A stretch of 64,000 nucleotides of DNA from Epithemia pelagica (lineage: Eukaryota > Protista > Bacillariophyta). Position 1 is the stretch's first letter, and each line of letters starts with the position of its first letter. Positions 17,215 through 25,011 of the stretch are shown one piece after another. Both the position numbers and the translations under genes were made by a program. The stretch lies in assembly GCA_946965045.2 (NCBI GenBank), contig OX337239.1, positions 620,001 to 684,000 of the forward strand, written 5' to 3'. The notes below the pieces were generated by a model. It was not told the origin of the DNA, ran no database searches, and was given only the letters and a program-made list of their open reading frames with translations.

Positions 17215-19180
17215 TCACAACTTGTGAGAGGACTTGCCACAACATGTATCAGCTCCGTCCAATGGACCATTCTGGCTGGTTGCCATCCAAGCATGCTCCG
17301 TGGTTTGCAATAATCCGGAACATGGAGTCCATAGTATGGTTCAAGGAATGGCGACGACGCCGATGGCACTTTTGGTTCTTCAAGTTGAGGAATCTGGAGT
17401 CCTAGTCTTGGCAAACTTTTGTCAGGATTGGATCCAAGACCTCTCGTTGGCTACTGCTGCTGGAACTCCTCTCCAAAACGATTGGAGCGAAATTCCATGA
17501 ATCCCCAACCACGGAACAAACATTTACCTTTTTAGTCTCCAAGACAAGGCTCCCAGCAAGACGACTCTCCATCCTCTCCATCGTGTCTCTTTGAATACCC
17601 AGCACAAGATGTTGATGTTATATTGGAAGCATTTCGAACAGCGTCGATCCGGAAGTGATCGGCAGCGCGCCGCATCTGCGCGATTTGTCGGTCGCCTTTT
17701 ATTCGCTTTCCGGACAAAATCGCATCTTGGACGATCACCTCTCTCTCGAGAGATGCTTTCCTGGTGTAGCATGACAATGGCAAAAGCCGACCAATTCACA
17801 TTGTCCTCAATGCGAGCAGAATGCCGTCTTTTCCCCTCATTACCAAGAAAGAATTGGCTGTAGAGAACGATTTCTTCTCTCCCGTAAACGGAACGACAAA
17901 CGCATCAATTTTTGCCTCCAGAACCATGACAAACCCATGCCTCGCCATCCCCAAAAAGAGAGCCGTCTAGGAGTATCGGGCGTCAGAGACAATGTCCATT
18001 TCCAACCATGGTCCATGGGGGTATCATCAAGGCACGAGCCAGTTGTTTCGGCGTGATACCCCATTTCCTTTGACATTCAGCCTCGCTGTTGTGAAAGTCT
18101 CATCATGTGGAGAAGATGGAGGGGGGACTTGTTTCGTTTTCGTATGTGTTGGGATACAGTATATAGGTTCAATTCTTTTGTTGGTGATCGTTCTCCTCCT
18201 GTACATGTGCCGAAATCAGAAATAGCATGCACTGGGAACAAATCCTGCATGCCGTAATGAATCAACAACCGTCGTTTTTCTGGACAGTCTCATCTACCAG
18301 TGAATTATCAGAGTCCTTCCTGCCAGGTGCTCATCAAGATTGCTCCGTAAAATCATTTTTCAAAGGTCATTCTTGTGGCCACGCTGAGATTCTGGCGGTT
18401 CGTGTCTCGTCGTCGGATAGGCTTGATTTGGGATCTTCCCAGACCAAGACTTTCATTTCATGTTGGTTTTCAAGCACTCTTCTGGCTGTGAACGACGTGA
18501 GACACACCAAAAGAAGCAATCATTAACACACTAATAACACAGGTCATTGGCTCTACACCATATGGAAAAACATCAGATTGTGCAAAGATTCGAGTGTCGC
18601 CCGAGAGATGATTCTCAGCCCCACCACGACCCCACCACGACCCCACCACCACCTTCCCGCCCGTCCGCATTGCTTCACGCGCGCCGGGTGGCATTCTGTT
18701 GTGTCATCTCGACAGCCCCACATGTTTTTGCATTCTCTGTTTTGCCTTGTTTCTCCGTGGATAGCGGTCACCACTGTCTGCGTTGTTCTTCTGGATCGAC
18801 CGAATGACCATATGGGGTGGTAGAACGACACCCCCTTGCAGAACCACTCTCGTGAAGCAGACGGCACTGCCGGCCTCTCCTGATTGGCATCTCTCCTCTC
18901 TCGGCGATGAATCTATAACGGCCTTGTTCTTTGTTGGGGCCCATCTTTGATGGAGAGGTGTGTTGGATCTAGACGACAAGTGGTAACCCTATTGTTGTCG
19001 TTGTCATTTTCTCTTTTTTCCAGGCCGAATAGTTCACTCGACAACATGATGCACCGCATCACAATGTGCATTCGTGGCGGTTGCGTGGAAAAAGCTCGAT
19101 TTGTGGAACTCACTCTCTCTGTGATTTATCCGTATCACCAGTATTGATTGTTGCCAAACAGAAACAGAAAAGTATCAATG

Positions 19181-19183
<3 letters not shown>

Positions 19184-19216
<33 letters not shown>
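19184..19216. repeat. (TA)n microsatellite
   Basis: Uninterrupted TA run of about 16 units. Confidence 0.95.
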
Positions 19217-19220
<4 letters not shown>

Positions 19221-19239
19221 CATATCGAGAAATTCTACT

Positions 19240-22200
19240 CTATACATTGTTGAGGCTGTGTGAGGAACCACCAAACGACGACAGCCGACGACGCGCCTTG
19301 TCCAGTTGCTGGACACTGCTGGGATCCAAAAAGTGTGCCCGACGAAGCCGCAACAAGACATATTCCAGGACGACCAACGAAACATAAATGCCCGTCAAGA
19401 CATATAATGCCATGCGAGCATTGGCAAAGGGCCAAAAACCGGCTTGGGCGGACAAAAAATTGCCATTGTACACAATACAAGTGGCAAAGCTGCGACAGGG
19501 CGTTTCCCCAATGTTTCGGTTGTACTCAAACTGATTCGTCAAGACACCGGTAAAGGCCCAAAAGGCAAAGGACAAACCAAACAACCAACGAGCACCTGGT
19601 GGCGCTTGGCTCGGTGTACCCAAAAAGCCGGCAAAACAAACGTTGAGAAACAAACACAACAAGTAAACCTTGAAGAATGCGTGTTTTCCCTTGAATATCA
19701 AACTGAGACAACGACCAAAGGTGACAATGACCATCAAAAAGACACTTCCAAACAAGAGCTGATTGGGAAAGGAGGTCCATTCCCATCCCAAAATGACATA
19801 TGCCAAGGACAAGGAGATAGCGGTCGAAACAAAGGGAATGGAAAGCGAGTAGGAAAGGGTGGCAATCTGATAGGACAGCAAAAAGATACGGCGGTCGTCC
19901 AGCTCCCAGCGATGAGCAAGCCACATTTGCGTTCCCAACAGAACATGGTGTTGAAAGATTATAATGGGAATAAAGAACAACATCATGCATCCCAAAAACA
20001 CCGTCGTGGGAGAGTTGGGATCAAAGCTTAACACAAAAGACATGATGGCAAAGCAAATGGGCAAGACCACCAAATCAGACAGGTTCCATCCATATTCCAG
20101 GCAAAGTCGTCGACCCAGTGCAACGACTTGACCCAGTGGGTTTCGCTCCGCCTTGGAGGGTGTCATGCGTTCATGAGGGATGGCCAAGCCGTGTGTCGAC
20201 ACTTCCCGTTCTTCTCGACAATGAGTCAGATGGCGATCCATGGAATGGGAAATGGTTCCGTGTTTCACGAGGCTATGGACAAAGTCCGAAATTCGGTCCG
20301 TAACGACTCCAACCTCTTCCTCCATGTCCAAAGCGTTTTGAATCACTTCACGATTCTCATCAAACACCACTCGTCCGTGCATCATGACCATCAGCTCATG
20401 AATGTACCCCAATATGCTGTCAGACGGCTGGAGAAGCGTCACCAAAATGGTACGATCCTGTTTCTCGGCCACAGTTTGCAGCAATTCCATCAAACGTTCA
20501 CTGGCCACACTGTCCAATCCGGAAAGAGGCTGATTCAAGAATGCCAAGAATAACGTACGTATAATGAGTGAAAAGACATCAGTTGTCTCAATATTATTTG
20601 TGGGCGACTCCAATCGAAAACATACCTCATCCAGCAACAACACGGATGGATCCGTCAACAACGCCGCGGCCACGGCCAACACACGTCGCTGTCCTCCGCT
20701 GCACATGCTGATCTTATTGCTTTCAAACGGTTGCACCACGTCAATCTTGTCCGTCGTTGTGTACAATTCACTTTTCGATTGTGGATCGACCTCAGACACA
20801 AGTGGCATGGTCGCAGTTGTTCGGGCTGACAAGGCTGCGATAAAAGGCGATTCGATGGGGCTCACCGTGTCGTCGTTGGAAGGTTCCTCTATCTTTGATA
20901 ATGTCTCCGAAGGTGAAATATTGGTAATATCTTCTTTCTTGACCTTGAGAATGGATCGCACCGCCAATGTCCTTCTTGAACCCTCTCCGTCTTTGTCGCT
21001 TCTCTCATCACGAGAAATTTCGTCTGGTGGTAGCAGTTCCGAGGATTGACACTCTTCTACTGGTCTACTTCTCTCGCCCGAGGATCGTGTTGGTATCAAG
21101 TTGACATTCTTGTTTTCTGGGATGTCTTCATCACTGTTGTCAAGAAGAGTATCATCAAGTTCTTCGTTTTCTGGTCGTGTCACAAAGGGGCTCGTGACTC
21201 CACCACGAGGGATTGCCTGCTCCTTGTTTCGCATGTCCCACTGATTTCTTGGAGTCATATTGGTCGATGGTCGATCGCCAACCGAAAATGCCGCACTGCA
21301 ATTGCCATGCTGACTGGAATCTGCATCCATGGGTTCATGGGAGGCTGGAAAAAAGGGCTGGACAAAGCGTTTGACTTCATTGAGTTGTTCGGGATTGGCC
21401 CCATACAAGGCTGCACAGGATTCCAAATACAAGGCAGGCGTCAAGTTGCCCATGGCCACCATATCGTGTTGTCTCAAGTAGGTTGTTCCTTCAATGTTGA
21501 TTTTGATATCACTCTCAGGGTCAACCTCCACTCCTGAACGCATTTGACCACTAATGGCTCTCAGCTATGGTGTGTGTGCCGAAACAAAACAAAAAGACAA
21601 ACATGAATCAGTTAAGAATGTGCCAGCGACCAACGTGTGCTGCAGTGACATGGGGGAACGTACCAAGGTTGATTTTCCGGCTCCCGATCGTCCCATGAGA
21701 CCATTGACCGTTCCACGCTTGAGATGCAAGTTGACATTGTCCAACAATTTTTGACCCGTGGATTTGAGATGGACCGTCAATTGTGCCATGCGAACTCCCA
21801 CGGGACGGGGTCGTTGTTGCAACCGACGCCGAGCACTCCCCAAACTTCCCAGACTTTTGCCACTGGATACCGACGATTCGTCGTCGTCGTCCTGGGCATG
21901 ATTGGGGTCTACCGCCGTATCACATCCGAACAAGCAGTCCATAATGACACGGATCAGACAGTCTCCCGCACTCGCCAATGGACTACAGATTCCCGTCACA
22001 AACTTGCCCCCTCGTCTGGATCGAATCAAGATACCCAACAAAATAAACAAACCAATATATCCAAACCAGACCATTCGCAAGACCTCGTTGACTTCCTTGT
22101 ACGTGTTTTCTACTTCAAACAAGGCTTGGCAAGCATTTGGTTCTGCTTCGTTTCCAATTACACAATTGGGTCCAGCGCAATCGTCCAATACCAAGCCCAC

Positions 22201-23937
22201 TGGTTCGCCCTCGGGCAAAAGTGCCGCGACACCGTCCGTAACAAACAGACCAATGGAATCGCGAATCGAGGTACCATTCACTGTGGCATAGTCCCAGGCA
22301 TGGACGTCAAACCACACTGCCATGCCCAAGTTATTGGGCAATTTGGTCGTCAAGCCATAGCCCGAATCCCGGCAGACGGGTGGAAAGGCGGCAAATACAC
22401 CTGTTTTGGATTCTGCTCCCAGATCGGCGCACGACAAGTGCACGAGTTCAATAGATGGCATGACAAAGCCATGTGTCACACACGATGGCATGATCCAGGC
22501 CAAGGAGGGCAATGCTGATGGTTCTGGCAAATTATTGCCGTTCTCCAGACAGGTTTCTGGTTGGTGTTGTTCGCCTCCCAAGAGGTTCCAAAAGACAGTT
22601 TCTTGGACGGCTCGTATGCGAGAGCCGGTCAATTCTCCCACCGCACTGGTCCGTTCCACATGGTCACTGGGACGAGCAGCCTACGTGGAACTGCTACTGC
22701 CGGCATACATGTCACTCAAGGAAAAGGTGAGGGTATTGATATCGTGTGTGGAATCAATCAAGAGAAAGGATTCGTCCAGCACCCAACTAGTACTACTACT
22801 CGTTGCTGTGGTGGTGTTTGTGGCTGCTGTGGATGGAGTAAAGATACCATGCCGCGCGAGACAATTGGTGGACGTACAACAGGGCAATTTGGAGAGTTGT
22901 TCATGATGGAGGGAATAGGCAGTGACATTGCACAAGGGATGGGTTGTCATATTCACAGCCGTCAGACTTCCCTCTTCAAATTCAATCCGATCACTGACCA
23001 AGGAGGAATCGGCCACAATTTTGAGTTGACGAGCTGCCATGGTCTGGGCCATTTGACGGAGTTGCGGCAAGTGATTCAACACGCCCAAGGCTCCCGCCGA
23101 AACACCCGTTACCACCAATTGATTCACCAATCCAACGACTGCTGGTTGCTCGTTGTCGTCTTGGTGCGTGGTTCCCTGCGTTGGGACGACAAAGGCATCT
23201 TGTTGTTGTTGGGGTTCCACAAGGGCTGTTGTCCGGCGTTGCTGTACTTGGTCGACGAGGTAGTCGAGGACGGCTTGAAAATGAAGGTCCCCCTGTCGAA
23301 TAATGCCGCCGCCATTGGTAGTCGTCTTGCTGTCACTCGATGACGAGGATCCCAAATACAAGTCTTGGGACCAATAATAGACGGCAATCTTGACAAAGTC
23401 ATGCAATACAGGATTGATTAGTGGATCGTTGGAAAGGACCGTATGGCCTTTGATTTGGCGTGGCACATAGTGGGACGACAAGCGAAAGGGTTCCGTATCC
23501 AAGACCGATTGACATTGGTCGTCGGTACCACACGAGCCACCTCCGGTAAATAACAAGAGAATATTATTCGTGTTCGTGTTTGTGTTGTTGTTGTGGTGGT
23601 TTGGTACGGTCAGAGAGGAGGACGACCAGGAGGACCAATCTTGATACAAGCCCACGGGAGATCCATCGCCGCATTGGGCACCTTCCAGAGGGATCCAATC
23701 CAATGGCATTGTTATTACAAACTTGCTTGGTATAGGAAGGAGGAGAGAAGGGGATTCTGGACGCGTTGCAACAAGAAGCACACAACAAAAGTACCTCCGA
23801 ACCAGACCAAGTCTTGTTGTCAGGATGACGACGGCAACAACAACAAGGGGAATGCTACGACTGCGTTGTTGTTGGATCTGAGAAGCTTTGGATCCGGCGG
23901 AGACTGCCAGAGATAGTGAGAGAGGGAGAGGCGACAA
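19240..23937 (-). CDS. Pectin-acetylesterase/Notum-like ectodomain + TM + ABCG half-transporter (NBD-TMD); one in-frame TAG at 22681-22683; introns 21663-21565 and 20625-20530; start uncertain
   Basis: PAE: AQCGDGSP, LLLFTGGGSC, YWSQDLYLG, VVTGVSAGALG (GxSxG), WIMPSCVTH. TM helix VWFGYIGLFILLGILI. Walker A GRSGAGKSTL, signature CSGGQRR, Walker B/D-loop VLLLDE|PLSGLD, then about 6 TM helices. ORFs 22681-23937 and 21565-22659 are in the same frame, separated only by TAG. Confidence 0.78.
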
Positions 23938-24155
23938 TGCTTGGTCGTTGGTTCGAGAGTGCGAGTGCGAGTGAAATAAAGCAATCTAGCAATCCGTTGG
24001 TTGTTCTTTGGTGGTATTTGCCTCTACTAGGTATTAGTGGCGCGTTTGTTTTGGATTCGTTCGCGTTGGAGTGGTTGCGTCATGTTACGGTGCATCTTGG
24101 GTTTGTGTCGCAACCAGCACCAAGGAGCTATAGAGATCTTTTGTTGTGTTATTGT

Positions 24156-25011
24156 ATTCCCGAGTTGACGACGAGACACATCATCAATCACTCATCACCC
24201 CGAGAAACCCCGAAACCATCATCTACCTCTACAATCTATCTTCTCTAGAAACTAGAGAGGTGGACATTCTTTTTGTTCGTCCAAGGTCCAAGTTGCGAGC
24301 GAAGAAATAGGAGTTAGGAGTTAGACACTCCAATAAATGATAGTGTACGAACTGTGAATAGTTCTGTTGCCGGGAATTGTCGTTCAACTGGGACTGATTG
24401 AATGTTTACTCCTACACTTGAGTGGTTTTCGCCTGCTTCCCCCTCTTTCCAGACAGCGATGATTCCAAACGAGTCGATGAGTAGTTTTGCTTCGAGAACC
24501 CTTTCCAAACGCGACCTGGGACCTGACGCACATGATGAGGTCTGTCCGTCGACCCATTTTAGAGCGAACAAAACGCGACAGAGTAGGGATCGTGACCCAA
24601 ACAAAGATACCCCCGGCTTTTCTGTGGTGAGAGATCTTCTGGTGTGTCCAGCAAAAGAGAGACTGTCGACCATTGACGAACAACCGGAGACCACCTCCAC
24701 CAAACGTCCAACACACCACCGACATAAGCAACTGCATTCATCGTGACCACCATGACCCTGTTCTTTAGGCGTGCCGTAGGATCGTGTCGTGCCTCCCGCA
24801 TGCTCGAAACGACTCGTATGCTACGGAGTAGTGCAACGACAACGACATGGTGGCCCTCCTCGTGTTTCGACCACCACCACCATACAATCACCGCCAACAC
24901 TACCCTGCAGCAACAGCATCGGGCCATGAAAAGTTTGGCTGCACCACGTCCTCGTGCCGAAAAGAAGACCAAGACATCTTCGTCCTCGGGCACTCCTCCT
25001 AGTACGACTAC
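24156..25011. repeat. Local segmental duplication, copy 1 (copy 2 at 32382-33270): upstream region plus 5' end of a DUF3727-like gene
   Basis: Colinear similarity from ATTCCCGAGTTGA through CTAGAGAGGTGGACATTC and MTLF(F/L)RRAVGSCRASRMLETTRMLRSS to AGTACGACTAC. Confidence 0.9.

What the first reader, a model, noticed from the sequence alone, without database searches (positions are those of the whole stretch)
19240..23937. Esterase-transporter fusion: pectin-acetylesterase/Notum ectodomain on an ABCG half-transporter
Seen in sequence: one reading frame carries a PAE/Notum-type alpha/beta hydrolase, a single TM helix, an ABCG NBD and a TMD. The nucleophile GVSAG lies before the internal TAG and the His-containing PSCVTH lies after it, so both ORFs belong to one domain. 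Established knowledge: the ectodomain-TM-NBD-TMD layout is known for yeast Adp1-like ABCG proteins, whose ectodomain is EGF/Cys-rich rather than catalytic. Inference: this may be a coupled export-and-deacylation module, for example for lipids or acetylated extracellular polysaccharide/mucilage. I know of no characterised example.
Basis: partly seen in the sequence, partly recalled or inferred. Interest (0 to 1): 0.75.

Follow-up and report, generated by a model that had tools for sequence, protein, structure and literature searches.

The report
Damaged diatom esterase-ABCG transporter fusion gene
This diatom gene joins a Notum/pectin-acetylesterase-type enzyme to an ABCG membrane pump in one protein; the fusion family is found across diatoms and I found no paper on it, but this copy carries a stop codon and two damaging substitutions and is probably a dead allele.

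Summary
On the minus strand, 19240-23937, one reading frame carries a PAE/Notum alpha/beta-hydrolase, one TM helix, an ABCG-type nucleotide-binding domain and a six-helix ABC2 membrane domain. Two of the apparent interruptions are short GT-AG introns (21565-21663 and 20530-20625).

The fusion is a conserved diatom family. There are at least 15 full-length representatives, in Fragilariopsis, Seminavis (4 paralogues), Amphora, Epithemia, Corethron and Skeletonema. They include one intron-less 1108-aa ORF and a complete MMETSP transcript. Most members have a signal peptide before the esterase, an invariant Ser-Asp-His triad and intact ABC motifs. The modelled ectodomain of a homologue matches Notum (Z 33.8) and its transporter half matches ABCG25/ABCG1/ABCG2. 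Four literature searches found no paper on this architecture.

This copy looks damaged:
- The TAG at 22681-22683 lies in coding sequence, not in a credible intron.
- A Cys that is invariant in the family (39/39) is Trp here.
- The ATPase H-loop His (40/42) is Leu here, while another haplotype has His.
- An alternative haplotype carries a 1-nt exon deletion.

No RNA data were available, so a 42-nt intron cannot be excluded. The scan had already noted this family elsewhere in the same genome (s1-232890, s1-230547). Coupled export and deacylation remains inference.

The parts
23710..23937 (-). In-frame upstream extension of the ORF (76 codons, no ATG). It contains a hydrophobic, signal-peptide-like stretch and ends in a pyrimidine tract plus AG. 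It is either 5' UTR, or first-exon/intron sequence. Unresolved.
   Evidence: another haplotype has a 12-nt (in-frame) deletion near 23879
23707..23709 (-). First ATG of the frame, right at the start of the esterase domain (MPLDW...). The closest relatives also begin here.
22684..23709 (-). N-terminal 342 codons of the PAE/Notum-type hydrolase domain (CGDGSP, GGGSC, nucleophile, Asp motif)
   Evidence: Pfam PAE 1.5e-17; alignment with relatives
23371..23373 (-). TGG (Trp) at the position of a Cys that is invariant in the family (YYCSQD; 39 of 39)
23092..23106 (-). GVSAG nucleophile elbow. The Ser is invariant in the family (40/40) and aligns with the GSSAG nucleophile elbow of human NOTUM in the homologue.
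22741..22764 (-). LLIDSTHD, carrying the presumed catalytic Asp (family motif YD, 37/37)
22681..22683 (-). In-frame TAG inside the hydrolase domain, in a variable loop 7 codons before a conserved block (HVERTSAVGELTGSRIRA)
   Evidence: present in contigs of two runs
22667..22708 (-). The only conservation-compatible candidate intron that would remove the TAG (42 nt, GTATGC..CCCAG). Unverified and unusually short.
21664..22680 (-). C-terminal part of the hydrolase domain, Cys-rich CAGPNC module, TM helix, linker and Walker A, all in one uninterrupted 339-codon stretch
22471..22488 (-). PSCVTH, carrying the presumed catalytic His (38/39 in the family)
22024..22080 (-). Single hydrophobic TM helix between the esterase domain and the NBD
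21667..21693 (-). Walker A (GRSGAGKST)
21565..21663 (-). Intron, 99 nt, GTACGT..ATAG. Its last three bases are the second in-frame 'stop'. The position is shared with L002 and Epithemia.
20626..21564 (-). Exon carrying LRAISGQ, the Q-loop (YLRQ), a disordered acidic/Ser-rich insert of about 200 aa, the signature CSGGQRR and Walker B LLLDE
21533..21534 (-). Site of a 1-nt deletion in an alternative haplotype (about 45% of depth in X1 and X2). It would shift the frame just after LRAISGQMR.
20530..20625 (-). Intron, 96 nt, GTATGT..ATCAG, between LLLDE and PLSGLD. The position is shared with L002 and with the NCBI model of Epithemia clementina.
   Evidence: 4 of 9 haplotype substitutions in 19800-21024 plus one indel fall in these 96 nt
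20431..20433 (-). CTC (Leu) at the H-loop His position (TLLQPS against family T[LV]HQPS, 40/42 His). The haplotype in X3 and the metagenome fragments in X4 have CAC (His).
19243..20529 (-). Exon with the D-loop, H-loop and the six-helix ABC2-type membrane domain
19240..19242 (-). Terminal stop codon of the gene (TAG)

Best explanation
The locus is one copy of a conserved, uncharacterised diatom gene family. Its product is a single polypeptide: an N-terminal Notum/pectin-acetylesterase-fold Ser-Asp-His hydrolase, one TM helix, then an ABCG-type half-transporter (NBD followed by a six-helix TMD). In most family members a signal peptide precedes the esterase. The inferred topology is therefore esterase outside or in the lumen, NBD in the cytosol, as in Adp1-type ABCG proteins. 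Like other ABCG half-transporters it would work as a dimer. The most likely working model for the family, which is inferred and not shown, is this: the ATP-driven pump delivers an amphipathic or acylated substrate (a lipid, or a precursor of acetylated extracellular polymer) to the outer face, where the tethered esterase removes an acyl or acetyl group. Alternatively, the esterase acts on cell-surface material next to the pump. The copy in this window is probably a recently disabled allele. It has a nonsense codon inside the esterase domain, Trp in place of an invariant Cys (a candidate disulfide partner, given the many conserved Cys of the ectodomain), and Leu in place of the ATPase H-loop His. 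It is otherwise intact: it has no frameshift, and the other catalytic and ABC motifs that I checked are present.
For: Architecture: Pfam PAE, ABC_tran and ABC2_membrane lie in one frame, and the locus is collinear with the fused homologue P0002. One uninterrupted 339-codon stretch holds the His motif, the TM helix and Walker A.

Family: phmmer against 1.84e9 representatives gives at least 15 full-length fused proteins of 1064-1554 aa. All three domains are confirmed in 7 of 7 tested. P0002 is a single intron-less ORF. P0058 is a complete MMETSP transcript ORF. All named members are diatoms.

Fold (on the homologue P0002): the ectodomain model (pLDDT 87.5) matches Notum with Z 33.8 over 325 residues. 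The transporter half matches ABCG25/ABCG1/ABCG2 with target-normalised TM-scores of 0.65-0.76. The best NCBIfam match is TIGR00955, the White/ABCG family.

Activity-competent family: Ser 40/40, Asp 37/37, His 38/39; Walker A, Q-loop, signature, Walker B and H-loop are near-invariant. Signal peptides are seen in most members.

Damage here: the TAG lies between blocks that are coding and contiguous in L002, P0064 and P0002. Cys->Trp and His->Leu are unique to the window among close relatives. The His codon is still present in another haplotype. TAG is an ordinary stop in this window and ends this gene itself. The TAG-bearing 2-kb contig is identical in two runs from two samples, at depth close to the summed depth of the two arms at the nearby haplotype split. 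An alternative haplotype has a 1-nt exon deletion.
Against: No RNA run was found, so splicing and expression at this locus are unobserved. A 42-nt GT-AG intron (22708-22667) would remove the TAG while keeping the conserved block. The two runs that confirm the TAG may be the data the assembly was built from. The state of the TAG and of the Trp codon in the divergent haplotype of run X3 was not displayed. Apart from the three lesions, the copy deviates from family-conserved positions no more than its intact-looking relative L002 does. Haplotype differences still show constraint: 14 of 30 exon substitutions are synonymous and the introns are far denser in changes. Any inactivation must therefore be recent. 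The window copy and its closest relatives show no signal peptide after the first ATG, so the topology of this subclade is not settled. No substrate is known, and the coupling of export and hydrolysis is inference.
Confidence: 0.6

Rival explanations
1. The gene is functional: a very short (42-nt) GT-AG intron at 22708-22667 removes the TAG, and the Cys->Trp and His->Leu changes are tolerated.
For: The donor GTATGC resembles the two confirmed donors (GTACGT, GTATGT). The length is a multiple of 3, and removal keeps the conserved DHVERTSAVGEL block. The rest of the 4.4-kb gene has no frameshift.
Against: The two confirmed introns are 96 and 99 nt long and pyrimidine-rich; this candidate is less than half that length and GC-rich. 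The relatives L002, P0064 and P0002 read straight through this region with no intron. The other two lesions hit residues conserved in 39/39 and 40/42 members.
Confidence: 0.13
2. The TAG is an assembly or sequencing error and the real gene is open.
For: A single base change would open the frame, and the flanks are conserved in frame.
Against: Contigs of two runs from two samples reproduce the window exactly over 22142-24216, at depths 141 and 96. They may, however, not be independent of the assembly.
Confidence: 0.05
3. The TAG is read through or recoded, so a full-length protein is still made.
For: The frame and the conservation continue directly after the stop.
Against: TAG ends this gene itself and 8 of the 23 long ORFs in the window. 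No other TAG-only interruption of a conserved gene was seen apart from the intron end. No readthrough signal was tested.
Confidence: 0.04
4. There are two separate genes, a secreted esterase and an independent ABC transporter, merely adjacent in the same frame.
For: An in-frame stop separates the first ORF from the rest.
Against: The stop falls inside the hydrolase fold, between the Asp and the His. The next ORF carries the His motif, the TM helix and Walker A without interruption. Relatives encode everything in one ORF or one transcript.
Confidence: 0.02

Closest known systems
NOTUM (Wnt palmitoleoyl-protein carboxylesterase) and plant pectin acetylesterases (Pfam PF03283)
   Same: Same alpha/beta-hydrolase fold over the whole domain (homologue model against Notum: Z 33.8, rmsd 2.7 A, 325 residues). 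GxSAG nucleophile, Asp and His motifs, many conserved Cys, and a secretory-pathway location implied by signal peptides in the family.
   Different: About 20% identity. Only the first half of the Pfam model is matched by sequence. The domain carries an extra Cys-rich CxGPNC module and is covalently tethered by a TM helix to an ABC transporter. Notum and the PAEs are soluble secreted enzymes (my own knowledge). The substrate is unknown.
ABCG half-transporters (White/WBC type: ABCG1, ABCG2, ABCG5/8, AtABCG25)
   Same: NBD-then-TMD order, six TM helices, an ABCG fold (target-normalised TM-score 0.65-0.76 over about 600 columns), and best family matches to TIGR00955 and ABC2_membrane.
   Different: The sequence is divergent: 17-22% identity, far below the TIGR00955 cut-off, and ABC2_membrane is only borderline. 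The signature is CSGGQ in this subclade. There is a disordered insert of 40 to about 750 aa inside the NBD, and an N-terminal catalytic ectodomain plus an extra TM helix.
Yeast Adp1-type ABCG proteins
   Same: Layout: N-terminal extracytoplasmic domain, one TM helix, NBD, TMD (layout of Adp1 from my own knowledge). PMC6112666 only confirms that ADP1 is a WBC-type half-transporter.
   Different: The Adp1 ectodomain is EGF-like and Cys-rich and not catalytic. Here it is a Ser-Asp-His hydrolase. No EGF domain was found by Pfam. Common descent of the two layouts was not tested.

Membership tests
PAE/Notum alpha/beta-hydrolase (PF03283) | Significant match to the family profile | tested here: met
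   Window 22684-23937: 64.2 bits against a cut-off of 26.6, E 1.5e-17. The match covers only profile positions 33-146.
PAE/Notum alpha/beta-hydrolase (PF03283) | Whole-domain fold like Notum | tested here: met
   Shown for the homologue P0002:1-455 (Z 33.8, 325 aligned residues, model 1-445). The window protein itself could not be folded because of the stop. It aligns to P0002 over the whole domain.
PAE/Notum alpha/beta-hydrolase (PF03283) | Ser-Asp-His catalytic triad | tested here: met
   GVSAG, THD and SCVTH align with columns that hold S in 40/40, D in 37/37 and H in 38/39 family members. The nucleophile elbow aligns with the GSSAG elbow of human NOTUM by sequence. The geometry of Asp and His was not measured.
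PAE/Notum alpha/beta-hydrolase (PF03283) | Uninterrupted coding sequence with conserved structural Cys | tested here: not met
   TAG at 22681-22683 between the Asp and the His. The 39/39-conserved Cys is Trp here.
ABCG half-transporter | NBD precedes a six-helix ABC2-type TMD in one chain | tested here: met
   Order seen; six hydrophobic helices in 19243-20529; ABCG fold for the homologue.
ABCG half-transporter | Complete ATPase motifs (Walker A, Q-loop, signature, Walker B, H-loop His) | tested here: not met
   Walker A, Q-loop, CSGGQ and LLLDE are present. The H-loop His is Leu in the window haplotype and His in another haplotype.
ABCG half-transporter | Scores above curated family thresholds (ABC2_membrane PF01061; TIGR00955) | tested here: inconclusive
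   Window ABC2_membrane: 20 bits, below 26.9. Homologues: 25.6-36.9 bits. TIGR00955 is the best hit but scores 138 bits against a cut-off of 736.
Adp1-like ABCG (ectodomain-TM-NBD-TMD) | N-terminal extracytoplasmic domain plus an extra TM helix before the NBD | tested here: inconclusive
   A TM helix is present. Signal peptides are present in most family members, but none is seen in the window copy or its closest relatives.
Adp1-like ABCG (ectodomain-TM-NBD-TMD) | EGF-like, non-catalytic ectodomain | tested here: not met
   Pfam finds PAE and no EGF in the window pieces or in the homologues scanned at E-value thresholds of 0.01 or lower.

The most novel reading that the evidence does not exclude
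The family is a natural enzyme-transporter machine. An ABCG exporter hands its acylated cargo (a lipid, or an acetylated precursor of an extracellular polymer) directly to a covalently tethered Notum-like ecto-esterase, so that export and deacylation are obligatorily coupled. I know of no described ABC exporter that has an extracellular catalytic domain acting on its own cargo. The family may bear on how diatoms build or remodel mucilage, their surface, or lipid signals.
Probability: 0.25. Interest if true: 0.8.

Novelty: new variant of a known kind. Interest (0 to 1): 0.58.

Why it matters
ABCG transporters and Notum/PAE esterases are both well studied, but I found no paper describing them fused. 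The family runs from centric to pennate diatoms with its catalytic residues conserved, which argues for a selected, shared function at the cell surface or in a secretory compartment. That gives a concrete, testable entry point into substrates that diatoms export and modify, such as lipids or acetylated extracellular polymers. For this genome in particular, the copy is an example of an allele caught early in decay. This matters for annotation: it should not be called as an intact gene, nor split into separate 'esterase' and 'ABC transporter' genes, as appears to have happened in the Epithemia record.

Tried and rejected
1. RNA evidence. The look-up of sequencing runs (kind any) returned only DNA-like contig runs, so read laying could not show splicing, transcript ends or expression. 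Its table also cut off the substitutions of the divergent X3 haplotype before the TAG region.
2. Word-based protein search with the esterase ORF gave only one weak hit. It missed even the close relative L002, probably because low-complexity words filled the candidate list.
3. TAG reassignment: rejected. TAG is the gene's own terminator and a common terminator in the window.
4. Longer in-frame GT-AG introns across the TAG (63 nt and more): rejected, because they would delete residues conserved with L002 and P0064.
5. Two-gene reading: rejected (see rivals).
6. The hits of about 1300 aa just below the family in the big search were checked as possible other ectodomain-ABCG types. They are ordinary full-size PDR/ABCG proteins.
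7. The first fragment-merging alignment gave spurious mismatches and was redone.
8. A search for an upstream ATG-initiated signal-peptide exon found none.
9. Exons were searched by reference. The one read-through used X at the stop, in a local alignment only.
Full report
WHAT IS THERE

On the minus strand three long ORFs lie in the same frame: 22681-23937, 21565-22659 and 19240-21543. Pfam finds PAE (PF03283, 64.2 bits against a cut-off of 26.6) in the first. It finds the first 32 positions of ABC_tran, with Walker A, at the end of the second. It finds the end of ABC_tran plus a weak ABC2_membrane in the third.

Reading the DNA shows that two interruptions are introns:
- GTACGT...ATAG, 99 nt, at 21663-21565. 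Its last triplet is the second in-frame 'stop'. Removing it joins GAGKSTL to LRAISGQ.
- GTATGT...ATCAG, 96 nt, at 20625-20530. It contains no stop. Removing it joins LLLDE to PLSGLD.

Both intron positions recur in the orthologous loci L002 and L003. The NCBI model for Epithemia splices the second one. Haplotype differences pile up in them: 4 of 9 substitutions plus an indel within 96 nt.

The model has 1423 sense codons in four blocks: 22684-23709, 21664-22680, 20626-21564 and 19243-20529. Hydrophobicity gives one TM helix at 22024-22080 and about six in the last block.

IS THE FUSION REAL?

Yes. One uninterrupted 339-codon stretch (21664-22680) contains the His motif PSCVTH, a Cys-rich CAGPNC module, the TM helix and Walker A.

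A word search with the last ORF found P0002, a 1108-aa protein with PAE, ABC_tran and ABC2_membrane. It is encoded as a single intron-less ORF on an 84-kb eukaryote-like metagenome contig. P0002 aligns collinearly to the window (E 9e-89 and 3e-102), to L002 and to the Epithemia clementina locus L003.

An exhaustive phmmer search with P0002 against 1.84 billion representatives gave 83 proteins at E<=1e-30. The top of the list holds at least 15 full-length fused proteins of 1064-1554 aa, plus many fragments. Pfam confirmed all three domains in 7 of 7 tested, and PAE plus ABC_tran in two more distant members.

Named members are all diatoms: Fragilariopsis cylindrus OEU07413.1, four Seminavis robusta proteins, Amphora coffeiformis, Corethron pennatum, Skeletonema marinoi and S. 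dohrnii. One is a complete ORF of an MMETSP transcript, and several sit on transcript-sized contigs of 3.4-5.5 kb. Their source names are generic: hypothetical, ATP-binding protein, transporter G family member, even 'lantibiotic transport'. Four literature searches found nothing on this architecture.

WHAT THE DOMAINS ARE

The N-terminal half of the ectodomain aligns by sequence to human NOTUM (E 1e-12). The alignment includes the nucleophile elbow.

An AlphaFold model of P0002:1-455 (pLDDT 87.5, pTM 0.92) matches Drosophila and human Notum with Z 33.8-31.5, rmsd about 3 A, over about 325 of 349 residues. It spans model residues 1-445.

The full-length model (pLDDT 86, pTM 0.78) matches AtABCG25, ABCG1, ABCG2, ABCG5/8 and ABCG16 over about 600 columns, with target-normalised TM-scores of 0.65-0.76. 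PDB sequence hits and TIGR00955 (the White/ABCG family) agree.

Across the family the key residues are invariant or nearly so:
- the Ser (40/40), Asp (37/37) and His (38/39) of the triad;
- the conserved Cys positions checked (two at 36/36, one at 39/39, and the two of the CxGPNC module at 38/38 and 34/34);
- Walker A, Q-loop, SGGQ, Walker B and the H-loop His (40/42).

Both the esterase and the ATPase are therefore expected to be active in intact members. Most members carry a clear signal peptide directly before the esterase domain. Together with the conserved Cys, this places the esterase outside or in the lumen and the NBD in the cytosol.

THE WINDOW COPY LOOKS DAMAGED

1. The TAG at 22681-22683 lies in a variable loop between the Asp motif and a block conserved with L002, P0064 and P0089. 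That block (HVERTSAVGELTGSRIRAVQETVF) starts 7 codons after the stop, in the same frame. The relatives read straight through. Only one candidate intron would remove the stop without deleting conserved residues. It is 42 nt long (22708-22667), less than half the size of the two confirmed introns. TAG is not reassigned: it ends this gene and 8 of the 23 long ORFs in the window.
2. The Cys of YYCSQD (39/39 in the family) is Trp here, TGG at 23371-23373.
3. The H-loop His (40/42) is Leu here, CTC at 20431-20433. The haplotype seen in run X3, and metagenome fragments in X4, have CAC.
4. An alternative haplotype, at about 45% of depth in X1 and X2, has a 1-nt deletion at 21533-21534 in the exon just after LRAISGQMR, with no compensating indel down to 21197.

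The TAG-bearing contig (22142-24216) is identical to the window in runs from two samples. Its depth is close to the summed depth of the two arms at the nearby haplotype split.

Against long decay: there is no frameshift in the reference haplotype. Deviation from conserved columns is otherwise similar to L002. Haplotype differences still show constraint: 14 of 30 exon changes are synonymous, including 6 of 7 in a TMD segment. I therefore read this as a recently disabled allele (about 0.6). The main rival is a tiny intron (about 0.13).

LIMITS

- No RNA run was found, so splicing, expression and the 5' end are unobserved.
- The first ATG (23707-23709) sits exactly at the start of the domain, as in the closest relatives, and no signal peptide follows it.
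- The frame is open for 76 more codons upstream and holds a hydrophobic stretch but no ATG. A pyrimidine tract plus AG lies just before the ATG. The true N-terminus, and hence the topology of this subclade, is open.
Structural statements rest on the homologue P0002.

MECHANISM

All of this is inferred. The protein would be a dimeric ABCG half-transporter in the plasma or a secretory membrane. Its tethered Notum-like esterase would deacylate either the exported amphipathic cargo or nearby surface polymer. The substrate is unknown.

EARLIER NOTES OF THIS SCAN

Two notes describe the same family elsewhere in this genome: s1-232890 (a head-to-head pair judged to be decaying pseudogenes) and s1-230547. 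I did not examine those loci.

VERDICT

This is a new variant of a known kind: an ABCG half-transporter with a catalytic ectodomain. It is present but unnamed in public diatom proteomes, and this particular copy is probably non-functional.

Noticed in passing
window 19174-19225: A (TA)n microsatellite lies directly downstream of the gene's stop codon. Contigs of all runs break there.
   Followed up: no
window 23710-23937: The reading frame stays open for 76 codons upstream of the first ATG and encodes a signal-peptide-like hydrophobic stretch, but it holds no ATG. A pyrimidine tract plus AG precedes the ATG. Another haplotype has an in-frame 12-nt deletion here. This may be a lost or spliced signal-peptide exon.
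   Followed up: partly
window 19000-24400 (runs X1-X3): At least three haplotypes occur in two samples. Indels within the main ORF frame in 22142-24216 are multiples of three (+3 nt behind 22559, -12 nt near 23879). The two intron indels are 1 and 2 nt.
   Followed up: partly
window 20419-21808 (run X4): A biofilm metagenome holds low-depth fragments 95-99% identical to this gene, including the His version of the H-loop codon. The organism or a close relative seems to live in biofilms.
   Followed up: no
L002 8879-11230: In the closest relative, the disordered acidic insert inside the NBD (between the Q-loop region and the signature motif) is about 750 aa long, against about 200 aa in the window and about 40 aa in P0002. 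There is also an extra intron after MVAMGKL.
   Followed up: no
L003 7749-11399 (Epithemia clementina, GCA_051400955.1): The deposited annotation splits the orthologue into two ABC fragments (214 and 444 aa), and no called gene covers the esterase part.
   Followed up: partly
P0046/P0199 (Fragilariopsis cylindrus) and P0050: Some family members carry a further domain of about 370-470 aa between the N-terminus and the esterase domain (after a signal peptide in P0046). Its nature was not examined.
   Followed up: no
window 21724-23343, + strand: Long antisense ORFs (264 and 260 aa) overlap the gene. They look like shadows of the coding strand.
   Followed up: no
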